IMG/VR virus record: IMGVR_UViG_3300042453_005404
Coordinates: 1-64,000 of that record
DNA: 64,000 nucleotides
Reading direction: 5' to 3' (one strand)
The position numbers and the translations under genes were made by a program. A model generated the notes under the pieces. That model was not told where the DNA came from and ran no database searches. It worked only from the letters and a program-made list of their open reading frames with translations. Below, one piece after another: positions 18,036-52,420 of the stretch (the stretch's first letter is position 1; every line of letters begins with the position of its first letter).

Positions 18036-18064
18036 AGTATATCAGTCAGTTGCGATTTTCTAAA
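18036..18064 (-). promoter_or_regulatory. Early sigma70-type promoter TTTAGA-N17-TATACT
   Basis: Read directly on the minus strand, with an extended -10 TG; lies 30 nt upstream of the AAA+ gene. Confidence 0.75.
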
Positions 18065-18107
18065 ACTTATTTATTTTTTTTTGTTTTTGGCTGAAATACA
18101 GGGGTTT

Positions 18108-18320
18108 TCAGCTGTTTTGAAGTTCAAGCCATTCCCAACCGTTGACCAAATCCTCTTCTGCAAGATTTGTGGCAAATCGAACGGCGTCGTTACGAGCAAG
18201 GGGATCGCAGTTTGTACACACAGAGAACAAAGGCTCCTCGCTGACATAGAAGGTCGATCCTTCGCCAGCTTCTTGACATTTCTCGCAAGTTACTTCTTCC
18301 GGCCAAAAATACTGGAACAC
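18108..18320 (-). CDS. Small putative Zn-finger protein (CEKC...CTNC)
   Basis: GTG start at 18320 with an AGGAG SD 7 nt upstream; two CxxC motifs. Confidence 0.55.
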   Translation of the reverse strand: MFQYFWPEEVTCEKCQEAGEGSTFYVSEEPLFSVCTNCDPLARNDAVRFATNLAEEDLVNGWEWLELQNS

Positions 18321-18333
18321 AGCAATACTCCTT

Positions 18334-19659
18334 TCACGCACGCCTAACAGCCTTGTCTTCCTTGCCCATCTTAACAATCAAGTCACCGGGACGGGCCGCA
18401 GAGATATCACCAGTTTCGGTAATAACCCACATAACCTTGGTACCAACCACGGCACCCATCTTGGGAGCATATCCGTCAGTCATGATGATACATGCACTGT
18501 ACTTACCCTTGCGCTTGCTGTCGTTGAGGTAACGCTGCACGGCATCGAAGTCTGTACCACCGCAGCGGGTACGAGCCCACTTAAAGCTCTGGCCGTTGTT
18601 GACCGACTGCAAAGACTTTTCATCCATCTCGGTATCAAAGTTAATGATATCGATCTTGCCTTCCTTGCTGGCAGCAAAAGTCTCTGCAAGAAACCGACGA
18701 ACATCATCGTCACTAACCGACCCAGATTGATCGATAGCACAGAGAATGTTGGCAATGGTGCTACGCTTGGCTCCCGGCATCATGTACGGAAGACGCTTGT
18801 TGATACGCTTCATGGTGCTGTTACGCTCCATGCTACGAGTGCGACCGATAAACATACGCAGAATGGCCTTCCAATCAAGCTCATTCTTCAGAAGCTTCTC
18901 GATCTGAGAGACAACCTCGGAAGGGATAGAGCCCCACGAAGCACGCTGCTGCGCAGCCTTGGCACCCTTCTCGATCAACTCACGAACCTGCTCACGCATG
19001 ATATCACGAAGCTCGTCGGGCACATCACCCCAACCACCGTGACCGTCGAGAGATTCACCATCCTCGTTGCCAACCTCAAGGGTATACTCACCCTCGTCAT
19101 TGGTCTTGCCGTTTTGCTCGGCATATTCTTCCAAACGAGCCATGTACCAATCGGCACTCTCATGCTTGGGAAAGCTCTTGATAAGAGCCGCAAGCTTGGG
19201 ATCATCCGACTTGGGAGCACGACCGGGCATAAGACAGAAATCGGGAAGCTTGTCGCCGCCGATAATCGAGTTGATGGCAAGATCGGTAGCAACGTTCCAC
19301 AGACGAGAACGCTTGCGATCCGCAACGCTGCGCTCTGCAATATGCATGAACGCAACGTGAAACATCTCATGCATAAGCACACCAATCCGCTGCTTGGTAG
19401 GAAGGGAACGCATGAAATCAGGGTTATATCCCATCTTGATATTACCCTGCTTGTCTGCACAAACGTAGGCAGTATCTACCTTCCAATCCGCAACCTTGGG
19501 AATATGCATAGACATACCTCCAAGAAACGGCTCCTCTTGCATGAGTTGAATGAACTCACGATCAAAACGATATTCCTCGGAGGGAACGTTGGGATCGGGC
19601 TCATGCCGCACGTTGAGAGAAGTGACCTTGTTGCTGGTGTTGTCGTTCTTGGTTTCCAT
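18334..19659 (-). CDS. DUF2201-type metallopeptidase-like plus VWA domain protein (MoxR partner)
   Basis: HEMFH (HExxH), WNVATDLAIN, MIDAS AIDQSGS, GGTDF and IIMTDG. Confidence 0.88.
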   Translation of the reverse strand: METKNDNTSNKVTSLNVRHEPDPNVPSEEYRFDREFIQLMQEEPFLGGMSMHIPKVADWKVDTAYVCADKQGNIKMGYNPDFMRSLPTKQRIGVLMHEMFHVAFMHIAERSVADRKRSRLWNVATDLAINSIIGGDKLPDFCLMPGRAPKSDDPKLAALIKSFPKHESADWYMARLEEYAEQNGKTNDEGEYTLEVGNEDGESLDGHGGWGDVPDELRDIMREQVRELIEKGAKAAQQRASWGSIPSEVVSQIEKLLKNELDWKAILRMFIGRTRSMERNSTMKRINKRLPYMMPGAKRSTIANILCAIDQSGSVSDDDVRRFLAETFAASKEGKIDIINFDTEMDEKSLQSVNNGQSFKWARTRCGGTDFDAVQRYLNDSKRKGKYSACIIMTDGYAPKMGAVVGTKVMWVITETGDISAARPGDLIVKMGKEDKAVRRA

Positions 19660-19665
19660 ACTATT

Positions 19666-19694
19666 ATAATATCATGTATAACTAGGAATCTAAA
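19666..19694 (-). promoter_or_regulatory. Early promoter TTTAGA-N17-TATTAT, predicted leaderless
   Basis: The -10 ends 6 nt before ATG 19659. Confidence 0.75.
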
Positions 19695-19703
19695 ACAAAT
19701 AAA

Positions 19704-19742
19704 AACCCCGGCAAAACAAGGGTTTCCTGTTAAGCCGGGGTT
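19704..19742 (-). terminator. Probable terminator after hsp20
   Basis: Stem aaccccggc/gccggggtt, followed by a T-rich tract on the minus strand. Confidence 0.65.
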
Positions 19743-19765
19743 GTTTAAGGTGTTAAAGATTGATA

Positions 19766-20113
19766 TCAGTCTACTGGAATGTTACGAGGTTGTTCTGATG
19801 CTTTGATTGGACAAAGCACAGTAAGAATTCCATCTTTGCATGAAGCGGAAATGGCGGATATATCTACTTTGCTTCCAAGCCGATATGTAAGTGTTTTCTT
19901 GTTTTTTTCTGGGCGTTGTAGGGTAATCACAAGTTGTGATCCTTTTGTTGCCAAGGATACATTTTCTCGACTATAACCGGGAACTTCTATGGTTAGTTTG
20001 CATGATCCATCTGCTTCATGAGTTACTTCATCTTGCAAGTTGTACAAGTGAGATTCCCATGACGAGTTACGAGGAAAATTAAAGATATCGAAATATGGTG
20101 CTAGTGTTGACAT
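19766..20113 (-). CDS. Small heat-shock protein (Hsp20 / alpha-crystallin domain)
   Basis: IEVPGYSRENV and ISASCKDGILTV. Start re-called at MSTLAPYF with an AGGAG SD. Confidence 0.85.
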   Translation of the reverse strand: MSTLAPYFDIFNFPRNSSWESHLYNLQDEVTHEADGSCKLTIEVPGYSRENVSLATKGSQLVITLQRPEKNKKTLTYRLGSKVDISAISASCKDGILTVLCPIKASEQPRNIPVD

Positions 20114-20219
20114 TTTTTCTCCTTGTTGCGCTGGCTTTTCACACCGGCAATCTAAAACCAGTATACACACCGAAAAAAACATGTCAAGGGGTTGTATTTA
20201 TTTTTATTGGAGAATTTTT

Positions 20220-20921
20220 ATGGAACTGCCAAACGACGTACAAACATTTATCGACACGGTTGGAAAAGAATATGGCAACGTAACAATCAAACCAAAAAGC
20301 TCATCACAACTAATGAAAGCTATTGGTTGGTTGTTTTCCGTCACAAGAATATCTCCAGAGTTTATGACACGTTACATCACAACCATTGGAAACACTGTTT
20401 ACTTTCCAGATGACATGCTGGCAAATCCAAACAGTGAATCGATGCTAAGAGTTGTGGTGCATGAAACCATACACGTTGCTGACTCTAAACGCTTTTCTGA
20501 TCCACTCTTCAAGTTCTTGTATCTCTTTCCTCAATCACTCGCTTTGTTGGCGTTGTTAAGCGTTTTAGCCGTTTGGAAAATAGGTTTCTTGTGGTGTCTT
20601 CTTTTCTTGCTGTGTCTTGCACCAATACCTGCACCATTTCGTTATTGGTTCGAACTAAGAGCTTACAGAACAAGTATTTTGTTTGCGAGAAAAGACGACA
20701 AGTTAACCGATGAACAAATGATACCAATATATGAATGGATAGAAAAACAACTTTGCACCAATCTTTATTACTGGACATGGCCGTTTCCAAGCATGGTAAG
20801 AAAACATCTTAAAGATGAAAGTTGGATGGATTCCGGCATATACAAGAAAATATCGGGATGGCTAGCTATACGACGCATTGTTCGAAAAATATCAACTGCA
20901 AAACAATCTAGTGGAACATAA
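20220..20921 (+). CDS. Membrane-associated zincin-like metallopeptidase
   Basis: TTIGNTVY, HETIHV (HExxH), two hydrophobic helices and FELRAY. Confidence 0.65.
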   Translation: MELPNDVQTFIDTVGKEYGNVTIKPKSSSQLMKAIGWLFSVTRISPEFMTRYITTIGNTVYFPDDMLANPNSESMLRVVVHETIHVADSKRFSDPLFKFLYLFPQSLALLALLSVLAVWKIGFLWCLLFLLCLAPIPAPFRYWFELRAYRTSILFARKDDKLTDEQMIPIYEWIEKQLCTNLYYWTWPFPSMVRKHLKDESWMDSGIYKKISGWLAIRRIVRKISTAKQSSGT

Positions 20922-21537
20922 CCAAGAGAAGAGAGAAAAAGACGTGAAATACCAACGATTATTGTTACAGATTATCGAAGAAGAAATCGACAAATATTTT
21001 CTGGAACAAGTTGCACCACCAGCGGCACCAGCTGCTCCAACGCCACCTACCGCATCAACAGATGCGGGTTTAGAGCCTGATGTTTCCGGTGGGGGCGAAG
21101 GTGATGATGAAGGCAATGTAGACAAAGCCATAAAGATACTTGCTGCTAAAACTCCTATCGAGGTCAAAAAAACGATTTTGTCTTCTTTACAAAATGGCGC
21201 AGAAAGACCTGATGCTGAAACTTTGATTGCTTATGTACAAAACAAGAAAGAAAAAGAGTCAACAAACAATTCTACTATTGAAGATACAGACAAAGAAATA
21301 CCAATTAACGTCGATAAAGCTGTTACCCACATTGTACAAACTTTCAAGTTCAAGGTACCAGAAAAAGCAGAAAAAGAAGCAGAAAAAGAAGATAAAGCAT
21401 CGATAGAAGAAAAGCCTGCGGAAACACCAGCAGCTCCCGCCGCACCAACTTCTGCACCTGTGCAAGAATCTAAATTGCAAACCAGTTTGCGAGAATATTT
21501 AAGGTACAAGCAATTAAGTCAAAAGGTGAAAAGATGA
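20878..21537 (+). CDS. Hypothetical acidic/Pro-Ala-rich protein, putative head-internal (probable GTG start near 20943)
   Basis: LLQIIEEEIDKYFLEQ motif and PAAP linkers. Confidence 0.6.
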   Translation: MFEKYQLQNNLVEHNQEKREKDVKYQRLLLQIIEEEIDKYFLEQVAPPAAPAAPTPPTASTDAGLEPDVSGGGEGDDEGNVDKAIKILAAKTPIEVKKTILSSLQNGAERPDAETLIAYVQNKKEKESTNNSTIEDTDKEIPINVDKAVTHIVQTFKFKVPEKAEKEAEKEDKASIEEKPAETPAAPAAPTSAPVQESKLQTSLREYLRYKQLSQKVKR

Positions 21538-21911
21538 AAAAGGAACTTACATACAAACAACTTAAAACAATCATTAAGGAATGTGCTTGTGAAGCAATGA
21601 AAGACTCACATATGGGTGGAATGCCCAGCATTAAAATGATTAAGCTTGGAAAACCTGATACGCAAGCTGGATTGTTTCCCGGTATGGGTTTAGATCATAT
21701 GGATCATGATGATTCACACTGGGATGATCACGACCAAGGTGAAAAAAGCATGATTCTTGCTAATCTTGCAAGAATGTCAGACAAGGCTTTAGAGCTTCGT
21801 GATTTGGCTGCTGGCGTACCCGACAACGAAGAATGGGTTCAAGAAAAGATTGCTGTTGCTTCTGCGATGATAGATTCGATTTACAACTATTTAAAATACA
21901 AGCAAGACTGA
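21534..21911 (+). CDS. Hypothetical protein (QLKTIIKE leader)
   Basis: 125-aa ORF containing EWVQEKIAVA. Confidence 0.65.
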   Translation: MKKELTYKQLKTIIKECACEAMKDSHMGGMPSIKMIKLGKPDTQAGLFPGMGLDHMDHDDSHWDDHDQGEKSMILANLARMSDKALELRDLAAGVPDNEEWVQEKIAVASAMIDSIYNYLKYKQD

Positions 21912-21924
21912 TAAGAGGTGTTAA

Positions 21925-22302
21925 ATGTTAACCGAAGATAAACTCAAACGACTTGTTTCTTTAATGGTTGAACGCAAGATTCAAGTGCTCAAAGAAGGCA
22001 AGAAATTTCAAGCCATTCGTTCGCTAACAATACAAGCGCAGCAAACAGCAATGAAATTTGAAGAAGACATGGTTGAAGCTTTGGATCTAAAGGAGCCAGA
22101 TGATCTTTGTGATGATGAGCAACAAATTTATGCTCAAGCAATGGCAGATATGCACAGCAAGATGATTGAAGCTGTTGTTCACGCTGCTGAAGTTTTGAAA
22201 AATCTTTCTGAACGTCAAAAAGAACCAGAAAACAAAAAAGCTGGTAAAGCTTCTTCCGCCGCATCTGGTAGCACTGTAGAAAAAGATCTTCCTACTCTTT
22301 GA
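21925..22302 (+). CDS. Hypothetical protein
   Basis: 125-aa helical ORF, co-oriented with its neighbours. Confidence 0.6.
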   Translation: MLTEDKLKRLVSLMVERKIQVLKEGKKFQAIRSLTIQAQQTAMKFEEDMVEALDLKEPDDLCDDEQQIYAQAMADMHSKMIEAVVHAAEVLKNLSERQKEPENKKAGKASSAASGSTVEKDLPTL

Positions 22303-22373
22303 ACATTCTTAACCAATACATTAAAACTCTGGTAACCTAGTATAGTTGTATTTACTAGCACCGGAGTAAACAT

Positions 22374-23273
22374 ATGTCAATGACAGAAGAAGAGTCAAGA
22401 GAATTTAAAAACAGTATCTTCGCAGCACAACAAGCAGCCCAAGGCGGACTACCAAACGTACAAGGTATGCCAATACAAACAGCAGCACAAGCTGCAAAGC
22501 AAGCCATTGGATTTGATCTTCCAGTAGCAGAAGTACCTTTGCCATCAAAAGGTCTTGTATATCCTGATGGTCCACTAGCAGGAGCTGAAACCGTTGAACT
22601 AAAACCAATGACAGCAAGAGAAGAAGATATTCTTATGAACAGAACTCTTGTTCGCAAAGGTACTGTTGTTAGCGAGCTAATCAAAAGTTGTTTGATCGAT
22701 AAAAACATTGATGTTAACTCAATGATTTCTGGTGATCGTAACGCACTTATGATTGCTGTGCGTATTACAGGCTACGGTGCAGAATACGCAGTAAAGATTT
22801 CTTGTCCTTCTTGTGAAGCACAACAAGATTGGACACTAAATCTTGAAGATCTTCCTGTTAAAGAACTTGATCTAGAAAAACTTAAACAAGTTGCTCCCGG
22901 TCAAAATGCATTTGAGTTTGTTCTTCCATTTTCCAAGAAAACAGTTATCTTTAAGTTCCTTACTGGAAAAGAAGAAGAAAGAATTCTTCAAGATATCGAA
23001 GCCAAGCGTAAGAAGGGAATTGTTCAAGAAAACCTTGTTACAACCAAGCTTATGAATAGCATTGTTGCCATTGAAGGCAATTCTGAACGTGGCTTCATCA
23101 ATCAGTTCTGCCAACATATGCCAGCCAGAGATTCATTGGCTTTGCGCAAGGTTCTTGATGAATCAGAGCCCGGTGTGGATATGAGCTCTGATTTTGTTTG
23201 CAATAGTTGTGGACACACGGAGGTACACGCCGTTCCACTCGGCCCCAGCTTTTTTTGGCCTAACGCCAAATGA
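22374..23273 (+). CDS. T4 gp26-like baseplate hub / tail assembly chaperone
   Basis: LPSKGLVY, VELKPMTAREEDIL, GDRNALMIAVRITGYG, CPSC...CNSC and terminal FFWP. Confidence 0.75.
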   Translation: MSMTEEESREFKNSIFAAQQAAQGGLPNVQGMPIQTAAQAAKQAIGFDLPVAEVPLPSKGLVYPDGPLAGAETVELKPMTAREEDILMNRTLVRKGTVVSELIKSCLIDKNIDVNSMISGDRNALMIAVRITGYGAEYAVKISCPSCEAQQDWTLNLEDLPVKELDLEKLKQVAPGQNAFEFVLPFSKKTVIFKFLTGKEEERILQDIEAKRKKGIVQENLVTTKLMNSIVAIEGNSERGFINQFCQHMPARDSLALRKVLDESEPGVDMSSDFVCNSCGHTEVHAVPLGPSFFWPNAK

Positions 23274-23526: not shown

Positions 23527-23570
23527 CTTGAAAAAACCTGCCCTCTCTAGTTTTACATAACTAATTTGAT

Positions 23571-39249: not shown

Positions 39250-39283
39250 AATCTATATAATCTATCAAATCATATGGTAACAT

Positions 39284-40408
39284 ATGGTCATGGATTATAT
39301 CGATCAACTCATTTCTCAGCTATATTTGGTCAAGCAACCACAACAAGCCCCAGAACGCTTTATACGGGCTTTTAAAGGCTTGTCTCCACGATTGCAAGGC
39401 AATGCCGTTCCATGGCATTTAACCATGCCAGAAAAGCTGTATAATGAGATTGGAAAGGATCAAGAACGTTTCCATACCGAACTAAGCAGCCTTGATCTTT
39501 CTTATCTTCAAGATGTGTATATTCCAACACAAAAAGTGTTTGATTATCTTCAACCAGCAAAGATTAATGTTGAACGCTATCAGCAATATTCACAACTCGA
39601 TCAAACTGGACATATTCAATCGTTTAAACCTAACCAAGATGGTTATGCTAACGTAGTTGAATATGATCGTGTAAGCAATATCACAGGACGGTTTAAAACT
39701 GTTTCTGGGCCTATGCTGTTACACCTTCCAAAGATTTATCGAAGCGTGTTAGAAAGCCGTTGGAAAGATAATGGAACAGTTGTATCTCTAGACTACAAAT
39801 CACTGGAACCAAGAGTGTTACTAGCTACTAGTGGAACACAACCAAAAGAAGAGATAGAGAAGGACATATATGAATCTGTAAGAACTTCTCTATTCCAAGA
39901 TAATCCAGAAGTTAATCGTGATGTGGTAAAAAAGATCGTGTTATCGGAGCTATATGGTGCAGGCATTGAAACCCTACGCCAGCGTTTGCCTAACATTAGA
40001 GATTTAGAATCAACTGTTGGACAGATCTCAGATTGGTTTGGTTTGGAAGCTATGAGAACAAAACTTTATGAACAATGGAAGGAAACAGGTAATCGGTATA
40101 TTGCCAATTTTTATGGTAGAAGAGTAAAAACAGAAACTTCACATACTCTTGTAAACCATTATGTGCAAAGCACAGCAATGGATGTTGCCATGCTAGGGTT
40201 TTTGAATATTCTTCAATACGTTGAAGAACTTGAAAAGCAGGAGCATATTGCTCCTATATTCATTCTTCACGATGCTTTGATTTTGGATATTCACGAAAAT
40301 AGTTTTAGTTTGATTAATGGATTGTGTAAGCTGGGTAGTGTAGACATTAAGAAGCTAGAAACCACTACGTTTTATATGTCCACAGACAAAGGGTTTTCAA
40401 CACTATGA
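39284..40408 (+). CDS. Family A DNA polymerase, polymerase domain only, divergent
   Basis: RVSNITGR, motif A SLDYKSLEPR, motif B RDVVKKIVLSELYG, NHYVQSTA and motif C LHDAL. No exonuclease domain within the 374 aa. Confidence 0.75.
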   Translation: MVMDYIDQLISQLYLVKQPQQAPERFIRAFKGLSPRLQGNAVPWHLTMPEKLYNEIGKDQERFHTELSSLDLSYLQDVYIPTQKVFDYLQPAKINVERYQQYSQLDQTGHIQSFKPNQDGYANVVEYDRVSNITGRFKTVSGPMLLHLPKIYRSVLESRWKDNGTVVSLDYKSLEPRVLLATSGTQPKEEIEKDIYESVRTSLFQDNPEVNRDVVKKIVLSELYGAGIETLRQRLPNIRDLESTVGQISDWFGLEAMRTKLYEQWKETGNRYIANFYGRRVKTETSHTLVNHYVQSTAMDVAMLGFLNILQYVEELEKQEHIAPIFILHDALILDIHENSFSLINGLCKLGSVDIKKLETTTFYMSTDKGFSTL

Positions 40409-41013
40409 ACCAAGAACAAGTAATCATTAAGAACTTTGAGCTATTCAAGACACAAGCTGCAAAGCTAGGTGCAAAAGGGGGTTCTATTCTAAGTTATGTG
40501 GACAACAATGCAGAACGAATCATGCTTGCACCTGCTTCAACAAAGCGGGATTATACTTGCTGTCATCCCGGTGGACTTGTTGAGCACTCTCTACGTGTAT
40601 TGCAGAATGCTGCCAAGCTACGTCAAGTATACAACCTTACGGACTCTGTTGCTACTTCAAGCATTATTCTCTGTTCTTTGTTTCATGACATTGGCAAGGT
40701 TGGCACGGAAAGCAAAGAATATTACGTAGACAATGCAAGTGATTGGCATCGTGACAAGCTTGGAGTTTATTACAACGTTGCTGATCGGTTTCAACACGTT
40801 CCAGTATCTCAACTAAGCCTTTTTACACTTTCGAAAAATAACGTTGAGATTGATATTGATGAATGGTATGCTATGTCTGTGGTTGGGAATAAGTCAGTTA
40901 GAGAAGATCTTCCCACACAAGGAGAACCTTGGATTTATGTTATTCTTTCACAAGCTGTAAAAGCTGCTTGTGTGCAAGGTAAAGGCAAAGAAAAGGTTAT
41001 TTCGATTCAATAA
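40405..41013 (+). CDS. HD-domain phosphohydrolase (YhaM-like)
   Basis: GGLVEHSLRV and LFHDIGKVG; ATGA overlap with the polymerase gene. Confidence 0.8.
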   Translation: MNQEQVIIKNFELFKTQAAKLGAKGGSILSYVDNNAERIMLAPASTKRDYTCCHPGGLVEHSLRVLQNAAKLRQVYNLTDSVATSSIILCSLFHDIGKVGTESKEYYVDNASDWHRDKLGVYYNVADRFQHVPVSQLSLFTLSKNNVEIDIDEWYAMSVVGNKSVREDLPTQGEPWIYVILSQAVKAACVQGKGKEKVISIQ

Positions 41014-41121: not shown

Positions 41122-41967
41122 ATGGCAAGTTACAATCTCGATGCAATCAAGGCAGCTCTCTCAAAGAACGACAAAACTTCAACTGGCACAAAGGGTACAA
41201 CCCAAAAGCAAGTATACTGGAAGCCTACTCTGGGCGAACACGATCTTCGTTTTCTTCCGATTCAAAACTCTTCTAATGAGCCATTTCAAACCGTGTCTTA
41301 TTACGGTGATCCTCTAACTCAAATGCGTATGGTTGCTCCATATTCATTTGGTCTTCCTGATCCTATCAAGGAACAGTTCGAAGAGCTTCGTAACAGCAAG
41401 AAGCACCCCGATGGTTGGTCTATTGCCAAGCATCTTCGTGCCAAGGAACGCTTTTATGCTGTTATTCTTGTTCGTGGTGAGGAAGACAAGGGTCCACAAA
41501 TCTGGGAGTTTTCCAAGGAAACTCGTGACCAAGTTTATGGTATCCTAACTCACAAGGATAACATTGACGAGGACATGCTTTCTCCTGATGTTGGCTATGA
41601 CTTCACTTGCTCAGTTACGCAAGTAATCGAAGGTGGTAAGCCACGGCTCTACAAGGGATCTCCTGTGAAGCAAATCAACCTTCAAGCTCGTAAGAAGCCA
41701 TCTCCTCTATCAAAGGATAAGGCTCAAACGAAGAAGTGGCTGGATGCAGTGCCAAACCTTGAAGAAATGTTTAAGCGTCAATGCAAGTCTCCAGAAGAAC
41801 TTGTTGAGGTGCTAGAACAGTTTGTTGCCAACCTTACTGGTGTCACTCCTAGTGCTTCTACCCGAGAAGCTGGAACAGATGTAACAGAAGCTAAAACAGG
41901 AAGAAAGCAAACAAATCCTGTTGCCGATAAACTTGAAGATGCCTTCGCAGACTTGGCTCCTTTCTGA
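41122..41967 (+). CDS. Single-stranded DNA-binding protein (T4 gp32-like)
   Basis: YWKPTLGEHDLRFLP, ERFYAVILVRGEEDKGPQIWEF and GYDF, with an acidic/hydrophobic tail EDAFADLAPF. Confidence 0.8.
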   Translation: MASYNLDAIKAALSKNDKTSTGTKGTTQKQVYWKPTLGEHDLRFLPIQNSSNEPFQTVSYYGDPLTQMRMVAPYSFGLPDPIKEQFEELRNSKKHPDGWSIAKHLRAKERFYAVILVRGEEDKGPQIWEFSKETRDQVYGILTHKDNIDEDMLSPDVGYDFTCSVTQVIEGGKPRLYKGSPVKQINLQARKKPSPLSKDKAQTKKWLDAVPNLEEMFKRQCKSPEELVEVLEQFVANLTGVTPSASTREAGTDVTEAKTGRKQTNPVADKLEDAFADLAPF

Positions 41968-43963: not shown

Positions 43964-43992
43964 TTTAGAATATCTTGGTTGTATGGTATTCT
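43964..43992 (+). promoter_or_regulatory. Early promoter TTTAGA-N17-TATTCT, predicted leaderless
   Basis: The -10 ends 6 nt before ATG 43999. Confidence 0.75.
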
Positions 43993-43998: not shown

Positions 43999-44550
43999 AT
44001 GAACGACGAAGACATTTTCATGCAAGAGCTTGCATCTGATCCTGATTATGTTGCGTGGTGTGACCAGCGCAAGCAAGAGGCTATGGATGAAATGTGCAGC
44101 ATGAGCGACGATCAAATCGAGGCCATACTTCCCCAGAAGTACATGGTTTTCGTGTATGGCTCTCTCAAGCGTGGTTTTGGTAATCACAAGCTTTTGGAAG
44201 GTTCCAAGTTTTTCGGTATTACTGAAACGGTATATCGTAACTTTCGTATGCATCCTTTGCTTGGTTCTTTTCCAGCGGTTACTGTTGCCATCGATGATGC
44301 GTTTGCAATCATGGGTGAGTTGTACGAGGTTGACGCTGCAACCATGAAACGCATTGATATGCTTGAAGGTAACGGAACGATGTACACTCGTCGGCTTGTA
44401 TCGGTGTACAACGGCTCCGAGATTGTTGAAGCTTGGATGTATCTCATGTCGGAAAATGACAAGCTTATTGAAAACAACGTAATATATTCTACCGGTCGAT
44501 TTGTATACACCGACAACAACCTTGGCACCCAAGAGTGGTTCCAAGGATAA
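43999..44550 (+). CDS. Gamma-glutamylcyclotransferase (AIG2-like) family protein
   Basis: VFVYGSLKRGFGNH, IMGELYEV, RIDMLEG and AWMY. Confidence 0.85.
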   Translation: MNDEDIFMQELASDPDYVAWCDQRKQEAMDEMCSMSDDQIEAILPQKYMVFVYGSLKRGFGNHKLLEGSKFFGITETVYRNFRMHPLLGSFPAVTVAIDDAFAIMGELYEVDAATMKRIDMLEGNGTMYTRRLVSVYNGSEIVEAWMYLMSENDKLIENNVIYSTGRFVYTDNNLGTQEWFQG

Positions 44551-46655: not shown

Positions 46656-46675
46656 AACATGGAGATTAATCGATT

Positions 46676-47080: not shown

Positions 47081-47113
47081 TCAAAACAGCTATATACAAG
47101 CTGAAAAATAATC

Positions 47114-47143
47114 TATAGATTTCTGATTATTTTGTGCTATACT
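47114..47143 (+). promoter_or_regulatory. Early promoter variant TATAGA-N18-TATACT
   Basis: Extended -10 TGcTATACT, upstream of ORF 47169. Confidence 0.55.
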
Positions 47144-47168
47144 ATTCCTTAAGGATCGACAAGCACAC

Positions 47169-47453
47169 ATGGCAATCAAGGAACCTGTATTCAGTTACCG
47201 CAAGTATCGAGTTACCCCAAATGTTGATTACATTCCGTGTTTGCCTGTTAAGAAGTCGCAAGGCTATTATGAGCAAGAGTTTTCAACAACAACACGTATT
47301 CCTAAAGGTGCCGAAGTTACTTTTGTCGCAAAATACGATAATGATTTGGTTGAGGTTCGGTTTACTGTTGAAAACTCCAAAGAGTTTTATCATGTGCTGG
47401 TAATGTCGGACTTTATTTGCGAAAACTTGCTGCCGATATTCCGCAAGAACTAA
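47169..47453 (+). CDS. Small beta-rich hypothetical protein
   Basis: 94-aa ORF with an AAGGA SD. Confidence 0.6.
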   Translation: MAIKEPVFSYRKYRVTPNVDYIPCLPVKKSQGYYEQEFSTTTRIPKGAEVTFVAKYDNDLVEVRFTVENSKEFYHVLVMSDFICENLLPIFRKN

Positions 47454-47552: not shown

Positions 47553-47650
47553 GATATACCTCGTATGTGTCATAAATATCGTTTACATTTCATTATGTTC
47601 GTGAGAACATAATGAAACAACTCAAACATATATACACAAAGGAGAAAATC

Positions 47651-47860: not shown

Positions 47861-48236
47861 ACACATCTGGTGTGAAAATATCAGAAAGCGGCATTCAAGT
47901 TTGCTGGGAAAACTGGCACAACTTGAATGCCCTTCTGGTTGGGAAACAATGATCGATCAACTGTGCTTGGATATAATAAAGCACGAAGTTTTCTTTTCAG
48001 AAAATCCCGACTATACACCAGTTAACTTTGTTCAGATCAAAGAAAAGTTCGGTGGTTTAAGAGCGTATTACGAAGGTGGTAAAATCAAAAACGAATACAT
48101 AGAAATGATACGTATCATTGTTCGTAAATACGAAGATATATCCACAGAAGTATGTAGTTTTTGTGGATCATTCCCCGCCAAACTAACAGTAAAAAATCGA
48201 TGGATACACCCAGTTTGCTCAGAATGTGAAAAATGA
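47826..48236 (+). CDS. Conserved phage hypothetical protein (QIKEKFGGLR family)
   Basis: GWETMI, VQIKEKFGGLRAYY and CSFCG...CSEC. Confidence 0.7.
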   Translation: MQPWPSMLPVTEHIWCENIRKRHSSLLGKLAQLECPSGWETMIDQLCLDIIKHEVFFSENPDYTPVNFVQIKEKFGGLRAYYEGGKIKNEYIEMIRIIVRKYEDISTEVCSFCGSFPAKLTVKNRWIHPVCSECEK

Positions 48237-48493
48237 TTAAAATCAAAAATATCGCTGACGCAATCGCAAAAGCTCATATGTTAACTCACGAAGCCAAACT
48301 TGAGATGTTCGCTATTAGCGAGAATCAAACAAGTTATATGGCTATTGTAACACATCCAATGCTAACTTCCAACATTGAAGAAGTTATTAGCGTACATAAC
48401 ATGCCTTCCGACATTGCAGAAGAATATGTGCATTGTCGTGTTCATGGGTTAGCCGCAAAACTACTAGCAAAATTACATCCAGAAAAACCTTGA
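48233..48493 (+). CDS. Hypothetical protein
   Basis: 86-aa ORF with an ATGA overlap. Confidence 0.55.
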   Translation: MIKIKNIADAIAKAHMLTHEAKLEMFAISENQTSYMAIVTHPMLTSNIEEVISVHNMPSDIAEEYVHCRVHGLAAKLLAKLHPEKP

Positions 48494-48518
48494 GATATTC
48501 AAAACCATGTGATATACT
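48490..48518 (+). promoter_or_regulatory. Early promoter TTGAGA-N17-TATACT, predicted leaderless for mnmA
   Basis: The -10 ends 6 nt before ATG 48525. Confidence 0.75.
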
Positions 48519-48524
48519 TGTTTC

Positions 48525-49559
48525 ATGGCAAAGATTCTCGTTGGGCTTTCTGGTGGTGTAGATTCTGCCGTTGTTGCTGCTTTGTTGAAGCGACAAGGGC
48601 ATGAAGTCTATGGTTATACCCTTAAGCTTCTAGAAACACTTGACAGTGATGAAGGTGAGGGTTGCTGCACCTTCAAGGATATTCGTGATGCTCGTATGAT
48701 TTGTGATCAGATGGGTATTGAATACCTTGTCACAAACTGGAAGCAACAGTTCAAGGAAAAGGTTATTGATCGTTACCTTGATGGAGCCAAACAAGGTATT
48801 GCTTACAATCCGTGTGTAACGTGTAATAGCACCATCAAACTTCCAGTGCTTGCTGCGGTTGCCAATCATTTTGGCTGCGAGTATATTGCTACTGGACACT
48901 ATGCAAGAGTAAACAATGGACGAATCAGCAGGGCAAAAAATCTCAAAAAAGATCAAAGCTATTTTCTCTGGGAAACTCCATCAGATGTTGTTTCTCGACT
49001 TATCTTTCCCCTTGGAGATTTTGATAGCAAGGAAGATACTAGAGCTCTTGCCCGTGAGTTTGGTCTTCACGTCGCTGACAAGAAGGATTCAACCGACTTG
49101 TGCTTTCTTGCTGGAGGTACCAAGGAAGAGTTTTTGGAGCGAAACAACGTTGTTTCCTTTGGTGGTAACTTTGTTGATGTTGATGGAAAGGTAGTAGGAA
49201 AGCATGAAGGATACACAAAATACGTCGCAGGACAGCGTGCCAACATTGCTGGCAGTAATAATGCTCGTTACGTTCTCAATGTTGTACGTTCTACTGGGAA
49301 CGTCGTGGTTGGTTCAAGGGAGCAGGCCAGTTCTCGATCTTTCTTTCTCACCAACGCTAGGATCGATTTTAAGGTAGGTGTAGATACGGTTACAGCAGTT
49401 ACCCGCTATCATTCATCTCCTGTCGCTGTAGAGGCTATTACGAGCTCTGACAGTGGTGTAAATGTTTCTTTGCGGGAATCTGTGTTTGGTGTTGCAAAGG
49501 GACAGAGCTGTGTGTTTTATTGCGGTGATGAAGTTGTTGGTGGAGGGGTGATTTCATGA
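48525..49559 (+). CDS. mnmA: tRNA U34 2-thiouridylase
   Basis: PP-loop LSGGVDS, GCC, NPCVTCN, IATGHYARV, KDQSYFL, KKDSTDLCF and GQSCVFY. Confidence 0.92.
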   Translation: MAKILVGLSGGVDSAVVAALLKRQGHEVYGYTLKLLETLDSDEGEGCCTFKDIRDARMICDQMGIEYLVTNWKQQFKEKVIDRYLDGAKQGIAYNPCVTCNSTIKLPVLAAVANHFGCEYIATGHYARVNNGRISRAKNLKKDQSYFLWETPSDVVSRLIFPLGDFDSKEDTRALAREFGLHVADKKDSTDLCFLAGGTKEEFLERNNVVSFGGNFVDVDGKVVGKHEGYTKYVAGQRANIAGSNNARYVLNVVRSTGNVVVGSREQASSRSFFLTNARIDFKVGVDTVTAVTRYHSSPVAVEAITSSDSGVNVSLRESVFGVAKGQSCVFYCGDEVVGGGVIS

Positions 49560-49849
49560 TTATCGGTGAGTTGTACTTTGTGAAAGAGCTTTTCTGGCTT
49601 CTCTTTCCAACGAAAGAACTGGCGTCGAAGCGATGGTGCTTTGCGGCGACCGGCGGTCGAGCGAAGCAGGTGAAGGGGGCAGTTTCTTTTGTTGAACCAA
49701 AGACTTATGTTGTTTTTCTTGAAGAAGATGAAAATGTAAATGAATGTTGCTATAAACTGCTTGATTCAAATGGTAACATTGGTTGGATTGGTTGGAATAG
49801 CTGTTCTGATTTCTCTAGCTATTTCGAGCTTGTAAAGGCAAATCAATGA
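49556..49849 (+). CDS. Hypervariable-cassette paralog 1 (small beta-barrel-like)
   Basis: IGELYFVK...LFPTKE-[GC-rich 49619-49681]-VEPKTYVV...KLLDSNGNIGW. Confidence 0.8.
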   Translation: MIIGELYFVKELFWLLFPTKELASKRWCFAATGGRAKQVKGAVSFVEPKTYVVFLEEDENVNECCYKLLDSNGNIGWIGWNSCSDFSSYFELVKANQ

Positions 49850-50148
49850 GTGATATTCAAATCGGTGAGCTTTATTTGGTTAAAGGTTTCTGTCTTCTCA
49901 TTCCAACAAAAGAACGGGCGTCGAGGCGGTTGTCGGGGGGGTGCGGGCGACCGGCGGCGTATCGACATGCAAAAGAGTTAAGCCAAATTTTTAAATGCAA
50001 CGTTTCTGTTGTTGAACCAAACACTTACGTTGTTTTGCTTGAAATGGATGAAGTATATTTCAAGGTTCTTGACTCAAACGGTAACATTGGTTGGATTTAT
50101 TGCTCTGATTTCTCTGGTTATTTCAAGCTTGTAAAGGCAAATCAATGA
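49846..50148 (+). CDS. Hypervariable-cassette paralog 2
   Basis: Same scaffold; GC-rich cassette at 49915-49965. Confidence 0.8.
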   Translation: MSDIQIGELYLVKGFCLLIPTKERASRRLSGGCGRPAAYRHAKELSQIFKCNVSVVEPNTYVVLLEMDEVYFKVLDSNGNIGWIYCSDFSGYFKLVKANQ

Positions 50149-50459
50149 GTGATTTCATGATTATCGGTGAGTTGTATTTGGTTAAAAGTTACCACTGGTT
50201 TCTCTTTCCAGCAAAAGAGCAGGCGACGGGGGTCGATGCGGCGAGGGTGGCGGTGAGGGTGTCGCAGAGTTATGCAAAATGGTTCAGCCAAGAATTTAAA
50301 TGCAAAGTTTTTGTTGTTGAACCAAACACTTATGTTGTTTTGCTTGAAGTAAATGAAAATGAATGTTGCTATAAACTGCTTGATTGTAATGGAAACGTTG
50401 GTTGGATTTATTGTTCTGATTTTTCCGACTATTTCGAGCTTGTAAAGGCAAATCAATGA
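50145..50459 (+). CDS. Hypervariable-cassette paralog 3
   Basis: Same scaffold; GC-rich cassette at 50220-50267. Confidence 0.8.
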   Translation: MSDFMIIGELYLVKSYHWFLFPAKEQATGVDAARVAVRVSQSYAKWFSQEFKCKVFVVEPNTYVVLLEVNENECCYKLLDCNGNVGWIYCSDFSDYFELVKANQ

Positions 50460-50770
50460 GTGATATTCAAATCGGTGAGTTGTATTTGGTAAAAGAGTTT
50501 TTCTGGTTTCTCTTTCCAACAAAAGAACTGGCGAGGCGGGTGCAGACCGCCGTGGTGGCGGCGGCGAGGTACAGGGCGAAGGCGGCGTGGCGTAATGCAA
50601 AAATGTTAAGCAAAGATTATAACTGCAACGTTTTTGTTGTTGAACCAAACACTTGCTTTGTTTTGCTTGAAGAAGATGAAAATTTTTTCAAGGTTCTTGA
50701 CTCAAACGGTACCGTTGGTTGGATTCGTTGTAGGGATTTTTCCGACTTTTTCGAACTTGTAAAGGAATAA
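50456..50770 (+). CDS. Hypervariable-cassette paralog 4
   Basis: Same scaffold; GC-rich cassette at 50528-50593. Confidence 0.8.
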   Translation: MSDIQIGELYLVKEFFWFLFPTKELARRVQTAVVAAARYRAKAAWRNAKMLSKDYNCNVFVVEPNTCFVLLEEDENFFKVLDSNGTVGWIRCRDFSDFFELVKE

Positions 50771-50774
50771 AGCA

Positions 50775-50990
50775 ATGCTTCAATTTGGAAAGCTTTATCG
50801 GTTCAATAGCGCACACGAAGACTTTATGGTAAGCACAAGGCGTGGTTGGAAGTTTGTCGGTAAAAACACTATGTTTGTTTTGCTTAAAGAAGAAGACGAG
50901 CATTATGTTGTTTTGCTATCTGATGGTGTGATTGGCAACGTTTACACAAATGAAGGTTCGCTAGACTTGGTAACAAAGGATAACATATGA
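50775..50990 (+). CDS. Small beta-barrel-like protein, distant relative of the array, no GC cassette
   Basis: FGKLYRF...NTMFVLLKE...VLLSDGVIG. Confidence 0.65.
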   Translation: MLQFGKLYRFNSAHEDFMVSTRRGWKFVGKNTMFVLLKEEDEHYVVLLSDGVIGNVYTNEGSLDLVTKDNI

Positions 50991-51241
50991 ATGACTTTAA
51001 TGTAAAGATTGGCAAGATATACGAGATAGAGTCTTTGGAAGGCAAACAAAAAATAGGTGGTGGTACCACTTTCATGGTTAGAGTTGAATCTAATCGTTGG
51101 ATTAACTATCCGTGCAAAGGTACAACAGCTTTGGTCTTGGATCTTCCTTCGCTCTCGGGTTTTTATAAAGCGTTGTTCAACGATGGCACTATTGGTGAGT
51201 TTTATGTTGCGGGCGATAGGTTTCGTGAGGTATTGAAATGA
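50987..51241 (+). CDS. Small beta-barrel-like protein, distant relative of the array
   Basis: KIGKIYEI...ALVLDL...YKALFNDGTIGEF. Confidence 0.6.
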   Translation: MNDFNVKIGKIYEIESLEGKQKIGGGTTFMVRVESNRWINYPCKGTTALVLDLPSLSGFYKALFNDGTIGEFYVAGDRFREVLK

Positions 51242-51296
51242 TCGAAATCGGTAAGCTATAGAATGGCCGGAACAGACGTTGATCCAAAATAATACC

Positions 51297-51325
51297 TTTA
51301 GATATTTGTTAAAGAATGGTAATAT
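51297..51325 (+). promoter_or_regulatory. Early promoter TTTAGA-N17-TAATAT, predicted leaderless
   Basis: The -10 ends 6 nt before ATG 51332. Confidence 0.72.
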
Positions 51326-51331
51326 AAAAGT

Positions 51332-51520
51332 ATGAAGTACAAGGTTCGCAACTGGATTGCTGTGTCGGCTTGGAATCGCAAGGGTGGTGAGCATTCACGT
51401 TCACAAAACGAGCCCCGTGGAGGCCAGCGTAACGTTCAACGTGAATATCTTGATGAATATGAAAACGAGATTGACGATGAAAGCGATTTTCATGACGATT
51501 TCAACGATTGTTGGGATTGA
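51332..51520 (+). CDS. Small bipolar protein (basic N-terminus, acidic C-terminus)
   Basis: 62-aa ORF directly at the early promoter. Confidence 0.6.
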   Translation: MKYKVRNWIAVSAWNRKGGEHSRSQNEPRGGQRNVQREYLDEYENEIDDESDFHDDFNDCWD

Positions 51521-51557
51521 AAATCAAAAAACAACATAAAACAAAGGCAAAATCATT

Positions 51558-51788
51558 TTGATCACACTATATATGAACACCAAGAACAACAACAGTGTAC
51601 ATTTGCTTGACACTTTGTTCGTTGGCAAGCGATACAAGTTTCATTTCACCCATCGCAAGGCATGTATTGGTGTTGTTTGTGACGTTGATAAAAGCAAACA
51701 AACGTTTGTTGTTTACGATGTTGCAACCGCTGGTTACGAGTTGATTCCTGTGCAACGGCTTATGTCGTGTGAAGGAATCAACCGATAA
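51558..51788 (+). CDS. Small beta-rich hypothetical protein
   Basis: LFVGKRYKF...IGVVCDV...FVVYDV. Confidence 0.55.
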   Translation: MITLYMNTKNNNSVHLLDTLFVGKRYKFHFTHRKACIGVVCDVDKSKQTFVVYDVATAGYELIPVQRLMSCEGINR

Positions 51789-51793
51789 TATTT

Positions 51794-52099
51794 ATGAAGA
51801 AGAAAGGATCGACTATGCGAACACAAACTGCAAAATCTGGGGATGTTGTTGTTATTTACGGTCGTACCACCTATGACCGTCAAATCATCAAGTATACCGA
51901 TGCAAAGGATTTGGTAGCGTATCTTCGTGAACGTGACTATCCAGAAGGAGATGTTACAACCAACGAAGAATATATGCGCCTTGTTCTTTCTCGCATCAAA
52001 GAAGCATACGAGGATTTCAACTTGCCATATCACAATGAAGATGCGTTTGTTTCCGCATTGTTTCGAATGGGAATGTTTGGAAAAGCAACGCTAAACTAG
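51794..52099 (+). CDS. Hypothetical protein
   Basis: 101-aa ORF; possible later start MRTQT after an AAGGA SD. Confidence 0.6.
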   Translation: MKKKGSTMRTQTAKSGDVVVIYGRTTYDRQIIKYTDAKDLVAYLRERDYPEGDVTTNEEYMRLVLSRIKEAYEDFNLPYHNEDAFVSALFRMGMFGKATLN

Positions 52100-52107
52100 G
52101 TACAATA

Positions 52108-52359
52108 ATGATAGGCAAAATGTATGAGCTAGCGAAAGCCAGAATGATCGAAACAATGGTTTTCGATGAAAGCTTTAAAGTCATCGATTCTATGAAACAA
52201 GGTGATTTTTTTGTGGTGATCGAACACTTATCTGCTCCTGTCGTAGATCAATATGATAGAATCCATAAAATCCATAAACTCAAACTTCTAACTCCCAAAG
52301 GCCGCACAGGATATTCGACCTTTTGGGACGACGAAATCAAACCAGCTAAAACACCTTGA
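52108..52359 (+). CDS. Small beta-barrel-like protein, distant relative of the array
   Basis: MIGKMYEL...FFVVIE...KLKLLTPKGRTGY. Confidence 0.65.
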   Translation: MIGKMYELAKARMIETMVFDESFKVIDSMKQGDFFVVIEHLSAPVVDQYDRIHKIHKLKLLTPKGRTGYSTFWDDEIKPAKTP

Positions 52360-52391
52360 TATCCAGCAAAAATAAAAATCGTAGATATTGT

Positions 52392-52420
52392 TTTAGATAA
52401 TCCCAGCCGTGTGATATTCT
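52392..52420 (+). promoter_or_regulatory. Early promoter TTTAGA-N17-TATTCT
   Basis: Read directly; 29 nt upstream of ATG 52450. Confidence 0.72.

What the first reader, a model, noticed from the sequence alone, without database searches (positions are those of the whole stretch)
18036..52420. Recurrent early promoter with a non-canonical TTTAGA -35, four copies predicting leaderless mRNAs
Seen: TTTAGA-N17-TAnnnT with an extended TG occurs at 18064-18036(-), 19694-19666(-), 43964-43992, 51297-51325 and 52392-52420. Variants are TTGAGA (48490-48518) and TATAGA-N18 (47114-47143). In four cases (VWA gene, GGCT gene, mnmA, ORF 51332) the -10 ends exactly 6 nt before the ATG and there is no SD. Established: sigma70 starts transcription about 7 nt after the -10, and leaderless mRNAs can load 70S ribosomes directly. 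Inference: this is a coordinated early regulon partly translated without an SD, which constrains host identity and might bypass translation shut-off.
Basis: partly seen in the sequence, partly recalled or inferred. Interest (0 to 1): 0.6.

Follow-up and report, generated by a model that had tools for sequence, protein, structure and literature searches.

The report
Phage promoter class making leaderless mRNAs
An uncultured freshwater jumbo phage carries about 35 copies of one bacterial-type promoter, and in about 25 of them the gene's ATG sits exactly where transcription should start, so these replication and repair genes are probably made from mRNAs with no leader and no ribosome-binding site.

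Summary

- **Where it lies:** the window is the first 64 kb of a 260-kb IMG/VR myovirus record from lake metagenomes.
- **Motif counts:** TTTAGA-N14-TGnTAnnnT occurs 5 times in the window, against 1 expected. It occurs 19 times in the genome, against 1 in the control. A matrix built from it finds 43 sites and none in reversed sequence.
- **Leaderless arrangement:** in 25 sites a start codon (24 ATG) begins exactly 7 nt after the -10, which is the predicted +1. None of the 25 has an SD-like tetramer. In-frame stops inside the promoter itself block any longer reading frame in 24 of the 25. Pfam domains begin at residues 2-4 in three of these proteins.
- **Leadered members:** the other members start with a purine at the same position (usually AGAAAG) or drive tRNA genes.
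- **Genes served:** DNA polymerase III alpha, ligases, an exonuclease, UvdE, mnmA, GGACT and many small ORFs.
- **Relatives:** the same -10-to-ATG spacing recurs in related phage contigs, some with a canonical TTGAC -35.
- **Polymerase:** the phage sigma lacks region 4.2, so the host primary sigma is the likely reader.

Early timing, the host, and any escape from translation shut-off remain unproven. No 5'-end data exist. This is a new, clade-wide case of a known mechanism.

The parts
19666..19694 (-). Promoter TTTAGA-N14-TGA-TATTAT. The predicted +1 is the A of the ATG at 19659, so the transcript is leaderless. A terminator-like GC hairpin and T-run lie just upstream.
18334..19659 (-). Leaderless gene: DUF2201 putative metallopeptidase plus VWA-like domain, 441 aa.
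   Evidence: In-frame stop at -15 and no SD-like tetramer.
18036..18064 (-). Promoter TTTAGA-N14-TGA-TATACT, a leadered member. The predicted +1 is the A at 18029 (AGAAAG...), giving a 24-nt leader with AAAGGA before the ATG at 18005.
16713..18005 (-). AAA-type ATPase gene (430 aa) served by the leadered promoter.
   Evidence: weak AAA_16 and AAA_5 hits, below the curated cut-offs
43964..43992 (+). Promoter with an A-rich upstream element, TTTAGA-N14-TGG-TATTCT. The ATG at 43999 is the predicted +1.
   Evidence: The orthologous promoter in G003 keeps the 6-nt gap although the gap sequence differs.
43999..44550 (+). Leaderless gene: gamma-glutamyl cyclotransferase-like (GGACT), 183 aa.
47114..47143 (+). 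Variant promoter TATAGA-N18-TGc-TATACT. It is leadered: about 18 nt beginning AAGGA before the ATG at 47169 (94-aa ORF).
48490..48518 (+). Variant promoter TTGAGA-N14-TGA-TATACT. The ATG at 48525 is the predicted +1.
48525..49559 (+). Leaderless gene: tRNA 2-thiouridylase MnmA, 344 aa. The Pfam match starts at residue 3.
   Evidence: The ortholog in G003 is SD-led instead.
51297..51325 (+). Promoter TTTAGA-N14-TGG-TAATAT. The ATG at 51332 is the predicted +1.
   Evidence: A strain variant in two runs changes 4 of the 6 gap bases and turns the -10 into TATTCT, with no indel.
51332..51520 (+). Leaderless 62-aa ORF with no family match.
   Evidence: The ortholog in G003 is also leaderless.
52392..52420 (+). 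Promoter TTTAGA-N14-TGA-TATTCT, a leadered member. The predicted +1 is the A at 52427 (AGAAAGAGAGA...), with the ATG at 52450.
52450..52701 (+). 83-aa ORF served by the leadered promoter.
40844..40872 (+). High-scoring copy (30.5 bits, TTGAGA-N14-TGG-TATGCT) lying inside the 202-aa ORF 40405-41013. It may be an internal promoter for the gene at 41122. Its role is uncertain.
55591..55619 (+). Further leaderless-type arrangement with a different -35: GTTACA-N17-TACAAT with TG, then 6 nt, then the ATG at 55626 (304-aa gene).
39255..39283 (+). TGG-TAACAT followed by 6 nt and the ATG at 39290 (372-aa gene). The -35 is poor. The -10 and the gap are identical in relative G003.
1526..1554 (-). TTACAT-N14-TGA-TATGTT followed by 6 nt and the ATG at 1519 (284-aa gene). 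Possible further leaderless unit.

Best explanation
This is a class of about 35 sigma70-type promoters in an uncultured freshwater jumbo myovirus. Each has four elements:
- an A-rich UP-like element (consensus about AAAATAMC);
- a -35 element TTTAGA, extended to TTTAGAWAWTC;
- a 17-bp spacer;
- an extended -10, TGnTATTCT.

The bacterial RNA polymerase core, most likely with the host's primary sigma factor, should start 7 nt after the -10 at a purine preceded by a pyrimidine. In about 70% of the units that purine is the A of the gene's ATG. The mRNA would then begin 5'-AUG, carry no Shine-Dalgarno sequence, and need the leaderless route of initiation (direct loading of a ribosome with initiator tRNA on the 5' AUG). 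In the remaining units the same start position opens a 15-30 nt leader, typically AGAAAG followed by an SD, or a tRNA operon.

The class serves replication, repair, RNA-repair, tRNA-modification and small accessory genes. It is therefore most likely the early or early-to-middle programme. The identified late structural genes (major head, tail sheaths) are SD-led.

Shown: the motif, its geometry, its statistics, the gene content and the conservation in relatives. Inferred: the transcription start site, which sigma reads it, and the timing.
For: **Motif enrichment**
- Searches show the motif far above chance in the window and in the genome.
- When sites are chosen only by TGnTAnnnT-N6-ATG, the -35 and the A-rich element re-emerge upstream without being selected for.

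**Exact spacing**
- 29 sites at offset 6 against a mean of 3.7 at other offsets.
- 25 of the 43 matrix hits are leaderless.

**Start-site context**
- 32 of 36 sites have pyrimidine at -1 and purine at +1 at the predicted start, against 24% genome-wide. This includes the leadered sites.

**It is a transcription signal, not a translation signal**
- The same motif sits 15-18 nt before tRNA-Ile and tRNA-Leu genes.

**The ATG is the true start**
- In-frame stops lie 12-42 nt upstream in 24 of 25 sites, often the TAG of TTTAGA or the TGA of the extended -10.
- 0 of 25 have an SD-like tetramer.
- 24 of 25 start codons are ATG, against about 80% of other genes (Fisher P = 0.012).
- Pfam matches start at residues 2-4 in mnmA, the phosphoesterase and the amidoligase.

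**Conservation**
- Offset-6 spike in G002 (23 against about 4.5) and in G003 (16 against about 2).
- The spike also appears when loci with PolIII-alpha identity of 38% or more are pooled, but not in loci below 30%.
- Orthologs keep the 6-nt gap while its sequence diverges.

**Host sigma is the likely reader**
- The phage sigma aligns to RpoD regions 2 to 4.1 and stops before the region 4.2 helix-turn-helix, as it also does in relatives G001 and G002.
- No Sigma70_r4 domain and no RNA polymerase subunit was found in the record.

**Class separation**
- The major head and tail sheath genes are SD-led. Both sheath genes are preceded by a different motif, CTATWTAT.
Against: - There is no 5'-end or expression data. 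The only RNA-labelled runs are assembled contigs and are probably DNA.
- The record is only about 70% complete. A sigma region 4 partner, an activator or a polymerase could lie in the missing part.
- Conservation runs 5 nt past the -35 hexamer (TTTAGAWAWTC) and ends 12 nt before the -10. That also fits an activator box of the T4 MotA kind.
- A generic TTGACA/TATAAT scan is not enriched in the window: 36 found against 31.8 expected.
- The host is unknown, so its ability to translate leaderless mRNA is untested.
- Genes downstream in these units use SDs as often as genes in the structural blocks. Leaderless initiation is a property of the first cistron only.
Confidence: 0.72

Rival explanations
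1. The motif is a middle-type promoter. The -10 is read by the host sigma or by the truncated phage sigma. The 11-nt TTTAGAWAWTC box is bound by a phage-encoded activator in place of sigma region 4, as in sigma appropriation by T4 MotA/AsiA. The mRNAs would still be leaderless, but the class would not be the earliest one.
For: - Conservation extends beyond a 6-nt -35 and ends 12 nt before the -10.
- The phage and its relatives carry an RpoD-like sigma that lacks region 4.2.
- The close relatives G003 and G001 share TTTAGA, while the distant G002 uses plain TTGAC.
- The genes served (polymerase, ligases, repair) would be delayed-early or middle genes in T4.
Against: - The element sits at the canonical -35 position with a 17-bp spacer.
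- It grades continuously into TTGAGA, TTGACT and TTTACT within the same genome.
- Upstream A-tracts are typical of promoters read by unmodified host polymerase.
- No separate, more canonical 'earliest' promoter class was found: the generic scan was not enriched.
- No activator was identified.
Confidence: 0.18
2. The sites are real promoters, but the mRNAs are not strictly leaderless. Transcription would start 1-5 nt upstream of the ATG, or the genes would be expressed mainly from read-through transcripts with SD-independent internal initiation.
For: - Start-site choice varies by 6-9 nt after the -10 in known systems (general knowledge).
- Many units lie in same-strand arrays where read-through is possible.
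Against: - The spacing distribution is a single sharp spike at 6 nt (29 sites), with offsets 5 and 7 at 1 and 6.
- 32 of 36 sites have pyrimidine/purine at exactly -1/+1.
- A 1-5 nt leader would still be functionally leaderless. PMC8244752 classes leaders under 10 nt that way.
Confidence: 0.08
3. The recurrence comes from duplication of one promoter-plus-ORF cassette, or from chance in AT-rich intergenic DNA, and has no common function.
For: Two pairs are clearly duplicated with their flanks: 110792/111459 and 131998/132527.
Against: - Spacers and downstream genes are otherwise unrelated: polymerase, ligases, mnmA, tRNAs and others.
- There are 0 hits in reversed controls.
- The arrangement is conserved in diverged relatives with a different -35.
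Confidence: 0.02

Closest known systems
Thermus phage phiYS40 leaderless transcripts
   Same: A large myovirus in which a whole temporal class of genes is transcribed as leaderless mRNA from host-polymerase promoters, with the -10 adjacent to the start codon (as summarised in PMC3594737).
   Different: - In phiYS40 the middle and late classes are leaderless, and infection shifts the IF2/IF3 levels.
- Here the leaderless class is the replication/repair/accessory (early-like) set, and the identified late structural genes are SD-led.
- A conserved -35 and an extended -10 are present here.
- No link to initiation factors was found.
- The host here is unknown and from freshwater, not a thermophile.
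'-10 region adjacent to the ORF' expression pattern of Deinococcus-Thermus and Actinobacteria
   Same: [quoted passage not shown]
   Different: - Those are cellular genomes, often with a weak or absent -35.
- Here the pattern belongs to one phage promoter class with strong -35, TG and UP-like elements.
- About 7% of the phage's genes are leaderless, but about 70% of the units in this promoter class are.
Phage lambda cI mRNA from PRM
   Same: The textbook phage leaderless mRNA that begins with the AUG (cited in PMC12340547, reference list).
   Different: That is a single regulatory gene in a host where leaderless genes are a minority (about 4.5% in the gamma-proteobacterial genomes where any were detected; PMC3160421). 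Here about 25 genes share one promoter type, and the pattern is conserved across a clade.
T4 early promoters
   Same: From my own knowledge, not tested here: very strong host-sigma70 promoters with A-rich upstream elements, a -35 that deviates towards GTTTAC, and an extended TG -10. They are scattered in front of many small early genes.
   Different: T4 early mRNAs have leaders and SDs.
Jumbo phages phiKZ and AR9
   Same: Jumbo genome size and distinct temporal promoter classes.
   Different: - They use their own multisubunit polymerases with unrelated promoter motifs.
- No leaderless transcripts were found in phiKZ (PMC8244752), and AR9 5' UTRs are 26-491 nt (PMC5312081).
- No phage polymerase was detected here.

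Membership tests
Sigma70-type (-35/-10) bacterial promoter | -10 hexamer TAnnnT | tested here: met
   All exact sites have it. The consensus is TATTCT.
Sigma70-type (-35/-10) bacterial promoter | -35 hexamer related to TTGACA, placed 16-18 bp upstream of the -10 | tested here: met
   TTTAGA matches at 4 of 6 positions with a 17-bp spacer. Variants are TTGAGA, TTGACT and TTTACT. Relative G002 has TTGAC.
Sigma70-type (-35/-10) bacterial promoter | Extended -10 TG and A-rich upstream element (optional enhancers) | tested here: met
   TG is present in all seed sites. AAAATAMC upstream re-emerges without being selected for.
Sigma70-type (-35/-10) bacterial promoter | Binding by holoenzyme and initiation about 7 nt after the -10 | not testable with these tools
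   No raw RNA reads were available. The only indirect support is pyrimidine/purine at -1/+1 in 32 of 36 sites.
Leaderless mRNA | 5' end of the transcript at, or within a few nt of, the A of the start codon | not testable with these tools
   Predicted from the fixed 6-nt gap between the -10 and the ATG. No 5'-end data exist.
Leaderless mRNA | No Shine-Dalgarno sequence and no alternative upstream start | tested here: met
   0 of 25 have AGGA, GGAG or GAGG at -18 to -4. In-frame stops lie 12-42 nt upstream in 24 of 25.
Leaderless mRNA | AUG as start codon (strongly preferred on leaderless mRNA) | tested here: met
   24 of 25 are ATG. The one GTG case (40879) is an intragenic site of doubtful function.
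Early (host-polymerase) phage regulon | Placed in front of non-structural genes and absent from structural modules | tested here: met
   None of the sites of 13 bits or more fronts an identified structural gene, and none lies at 60-100 kb, 176-216 kb or 234-248 kb. The one such site inside a structural-looking block is the intragenic copy at 40872.
Early (host-polymerase) phage regulon | Transcribed first, without phage protein synthesis | not testable with these tools
   No infection system and no time-course data.
T4-type middle promoter (activator box replacing the -35) | Box centred near -30 bound by a phage activator, together with an anti-sigma co-factor | tested here: inconclusive
   The extended box TTTAGAWAWTC ends 12 nt before the -10, but it starts at the canonical -35 position. 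No search for MotA or AsiA was run and no activator was identified.

The most novel reading that the evidence does not exclude
A whole clade of freshwater jumbo myoviruses, with PolIII-alpha identity down to about 38% and GC from 31% to 59%, may have fixed leaderless initiation as the default for the first cistron of early transcription units. The early promoter would then double as the translation signal.

Evolution appears to toggle single genes between three forms: leaderless, AGAAAG-leadered and SD-led. If the phage also biases the host towards 70S or leaderless initiation early in infection, this would be a translational take-over strategy with the opposite timing to phiYS40. It would also serve as a sequence marker for predicting the hosts of uncultured phages.
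Probability: 0.2. Interest if true: 0.7.

Novelty: new variant of a known kind. Interest (0 to 1): 0.52.

Why it matters
- **Biology:** it gives a sequence-level, testable map of the probable early transcription programme of an abundant but uncultured lake phage, found in runs from 17 studies, mostly lake and freshwater. It shows that leaderless expression can be a programmed, clade-conserved property of one phage promoter class rather than an oddity of single genes.
- **Annotation:** gene callers that expect an RBS will misplace these starts. The first ATG 7 nt after TGnTAnnnT is the start.
- **Host prediction:** the mix of leaderless and AGGAG-led genes argues against Bacteroidota-type hosts, which lack SD-led initiation, and fits hosts that use both modes.
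- **Engineering:** the element is a compact promoter of about 45 bp that needs no 5' UTR.

Tried and rejected
**Close and cultured relatives**
- No near-identical phage record exists in GenBank.
- The best PolIII-alpha match to a cultured phage is under 30% identity.

**Host assignment**
- The best cellular matches to mnmA are only 34-39% identical and are spread over Acidobacteriota, Gemmatimonadota and others, so they say nothing about the host.
- No WhiB, a marker of actinophages, in this record or in five relatives.
- The Atlas look-alikes of the sigma factor give no host signal.

**Translation take-over genes**
- No ribosomal protein S21 and no IF3.

**Phage polymerase**
- No multisubunit RNA polymerase match.
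- The single-subunit family search rang nowhere, not even in the control genomes, so it is uninformative.

**RNA evidence**
- The runs that hold the phage are stored as contigs, and the two runs labelled RNA are probably DNA. They give no start sites. Only strain variation could be read from them.

**Other checks**
- A generic E. coli-consensus promoter scan is not enriched: 36 found against 31.8 expected. It cannot by itself support or refute the class.
- GTAAAAC as a 7-mer is not enriched. Only the longer AAAACCTSCCCTCT form recurs.
- The 93-aa ORF after the sigma gene is not a detached region 4.
- The phiYS40 primary paper could not be read. It is cited through PMC3594737.


Full report
**Context**

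The window is bases 1-64000 of a 260,466-bp IMG/VR virus record. The record is linear and CheckV rates it about 70% complete. GC content is about 40%.

The phage is a myovirus. It has a major head protein and two tail-sheath paralogs, DNA polymerase III alpha, ligases, a cluster of 10 tRNA genes and its own sigma-like protein. It has no close relative among cultured phages.

Near-identical DNA occurs in runs from 17 studies, mostly lake, reservoir and freshwater metagenomes. One relative is a complete 305-kb genome with terminal repeats. The group is therefore a clade of jumbo phages.

**Observation**

That is 5 against 1.0 expected. The TTGAGA variant at 48490-48518 and the TATAGA-N18 variant at 47114-47143 are also present.

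The pattern generalises across the whole record:
- TTTAGA-N14-TGnTAnnnT occurs 19 times, against once for the backwards control.
- A position matrix covers only the promoter, from 12 nt upstream of the -35 to the end of the -10. It gives 43 hits of 10 bits or more and none in reversed sequence.
- The consensus is an A-rich AAAATAMC element, then TTTAGA (often TTTAGAWAWTC), a 14-nt variable stretch, then TGnTATTCT.
- When sites are picked only by TGnTAnnnT-N6-ATG, the -35 and the A-rich element still emerge upstream. The two halves are therefore truly linked.

**The leaderless arrangement**

I took all 2128 ATGs that open 50 or more codons. TGnTAnnnT ends exactly 6 nt upstream of 29 of them. 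Other offsets average 3.7, with 1 at offset 5 and 6 at offset 7 (Poisson P about 8e-17). Of the 43 matrix hits, 25 have a start codon at that position.

For these 25:
- None has AGGA, GGAG or GAGG at -18 to -4.
- In 24, the nearest in-frame stop lies 12-42 nt upstream. It is frequently the TAG inside TTTAGA or the TGA of the extended -10, so the frame cannot start further upstream. The exception is the intragenic GTG site at 40879.
- 24 are ATG, against about 80% of other genes.

Pfam domains begin at residues 2-4 in mnmA, the metallophosphoesterase and the amidoligase. That excludes a start further downstream for those genes.

At the predicted start, 32 of 36 sites have a pyrimidine at -1 and a purine at +1. 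The genome-wide frequency of that dinucleotide class is 24%.

The leadered members begin at that same position with A, typically AGAAAG. They carry a 15-30 nt leader with an SD-like AAGGA or AGGAG. The window sites at 18036 and 52392 are of this kind.

Two further copies lie 15-18 nt before tRNA-Ile and tRNA-Leu genes. The motif is therefore a transcription signal and not a translation signal.

**Genes served**

The genes behind this promoter class are:
- DNA polymerase III alpha and an ATP-dependent DNA ligase;
- a T4-type RNA ligase and a cyclic-phosphate-processing receiver-domain protein;
- a metallophosphoesterase and an RNase T-like exonuclease;
- a KaiC/DnaB-like ATPase and the UV endonuclease UvdE;
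- an amidoligase, MnmA, a GGACT protein and a DUF2201 metallopeptidase/VWA protein with a neighbouring AAA ATPase;
- many small ORFs.

Twenty of the 36 sites of 13 bits or more lie between 101 and 133 kb. None fronts an identified structural gene; the only one inside a structural-looking block is the intragenic copy at 40872. The major head and sheath genes have leaders with AGGAG-type SDs. Both sheath genes, and several other large genes, are preceded at 24-58 nt by a different motif, CTATWTAT.

About 40% of all predicted genes have a strong 5-mer SD. That share is similar in the early-like and the structural-like regions. Leaderless initiation is therefore a property of the promoter-proximal cistron only. 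It is not a genome-wide switch of translation mode.

**Relatives**

Polymerase III alpha retrieved about 35 related loci.

- **G002** (320 kb, 44% GC, 55% identity): 23 sites at offset 6 against about 4.5 elsewhere. Its -35 is a plain (C/G)TTGAC.
- **G003** (123 kb, 95% identity): 16 sites against about 2, and it uses TTTAGA.
- **Pooled loci with 38% identity or more**, GC 31-59%: these keep the spike.
- **Loci below 30% identity**: these do not show it.

Orthologous genes often stay leaderless while the 6-nt gap sequence diverges. Some toggle between forms, however. mnmA is SD-led in G003, and the ortholog of the gene at 129595 is AGAAAG-leadered in G001.

A strain variant seen in two metagenomes changes 4 of the 6 gap bases before ORF 51332. 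It also converts the -10 from TAATAT to the consensus TATTCT, without any indel.

**Which polymerase reads it**

No phage RNA polymerase subunit was detected. The multisubunit search found nothing, and the single-subunit search was uninformative.

The phage sigma (genome 162693-163472, minus strand) aligns to RpoD, RpoS and SigA from region 2 to region 4.1. It ends just where the region 4.2 helix-turn-helix should begin. The same truncation is conserved in G001 and G002. No Sigma70_r4 domain occurs anywhere in the record.

A sigma without region 4.2 cannot read a -35 in the usual way. The -35-dependent class is therefore best assigned to the host's primary sigma. The truncated phage sigma is then a candidate reader for the single-element CTATWTAT sites. 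This is inference.

The main alternative is that the extended TTTAGAWAWTC box is bound by a phage activator, which would make this a middle class.

**Host**

The host is not identified.
- WhiB is absent.
- mnmA is only 34-39% identical to any cellular homolog found.
- Heavy use of AGGAG argues against Bacteroidota-like hosts, which lack SD-led initiation.
- Leaderless genes are common in Actinobacteria, Deinococcus-Thermus, Acidobacteria and delta-proteobacteria. They also occur at a few percent in a minority of genomes of several other phyla (PMC3160421).

The constraint on the host is therefore weak.

**Comparison with known systems**

This is the known '-10 adjacent to the ORF' mode of leaderless expression (PMC12340547, PMC3160421, PMC4007540). 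It is used by a phage, as in lambda cI and especially phiYS40 (PMC3594737).

It differs from those cases in three ways:
- It is tied to one strong, fully equipped promoter class.
- It serves the early-like genes, not the late ones.
- It is conserved across a diverse uncultured jumbo-phage clade.

The studied jumbo phages phiKZ and AR9 have no leaderless transcripts (PMC8244752, PMC5312081).

**Verdict**

- The promoter-plus-leaderless reading is strongly supported by sequence statistics, but no RNA 5' end confirms it.
- 'Early', 'host-constraining' and 'shut-off bypass' remain hypotheses.

Noticed in passing
Genome 204402, 207641, 241015, 244673, 251594, 168826, 163914, 97523, 84774 (loci L010, L014, L016, L018). 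None of these gene-upstream sites lies in the window.: A second recurrent upstream motif, CTAT(A/T)TAT, lies 24-58 nt before the ATG of SD-led genes, including both tail-sheath genes and several other large genes. There are 28 sites against 16 for the reversed control, and roughly half lie within 60 nt upstream of a gene start. It is a candidate late promoter.
   Followed up: partly
L014:2693-3472 (minus strand), which is genome 162693-163472: The phage sigma factor resembles RpoD/RpoS across regions 2 to 4.1 but ends before the region 4.2 helix-turn-helix. The truncation is conserved in relatives G001 and G002. An M78-like peptidase gene lies just upstream.
   Followed up: partly
Window about 35850 (plus strand) and about 23540; genome 70853, 201369: The motif AAAACCT(G/C)CCCTCT, often preceded by TGT, recurs upstream of several large genes. 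Its function is unknown; it could be a promoter, an operator or part of a terminator.
   Followed up: partly
Window 49556-50770: A tandem array of four paralogous small genes (97-104 aa). Metagenome contigs show skips and back-joins here, which indicates copy-number or arrangement variation between strains.
   Followed up: no
L021, L022, L023 (polymerase III alpha gene of close relatives): The polymerase gene spans about 4.9 kb in these relatives, against 3.7 kb here. It therefore carries an insertion of about 1.3 kb, possibly an intein, an intron or a homing endonuclease.
   Followed up: no
L013:15285-17034 (minus strand), which is genome 155285-157034: A cluster of 10 tRNA genes: Asn, Lys, Ile(tat), Val, Glu, Tyr, Ser, Pro, Leu(taa) and Leu(caa). 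Copies of the same promoter class drive it.
   Followed up: partly
Genome 114364-126629 (L011, L012): An RNA-repair-like gene set, each gene behind its own leaderless promoter: a T4-type RNA ligase, a metallophosphoesterase, an RNase T-like exonuclease and a cyclic-phosphate-processing receiver-domain protein. An amidoligase and a DNA ligase lie nearby.
   Followed up: no
Window 2196-2280 (minus strand) and genome 171960-172043 (plus strand): A nearly identical 60-nt upstream element (GGGG..TTCTATATATTGTTATTGGGTAA...CCCAGAA.AACAGGAG) precedes two paralogous genes, both of which start ATGAGATTA.
   Followed up: no
Genome 110764-110799 and 111431-111466 (L011): A promoter plus the 5' end of its ORF is duplicated almost exactly about 670 bp apart. 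Each copy also contains a second, overlapping, weaker match to the motif.
   Followed up: no
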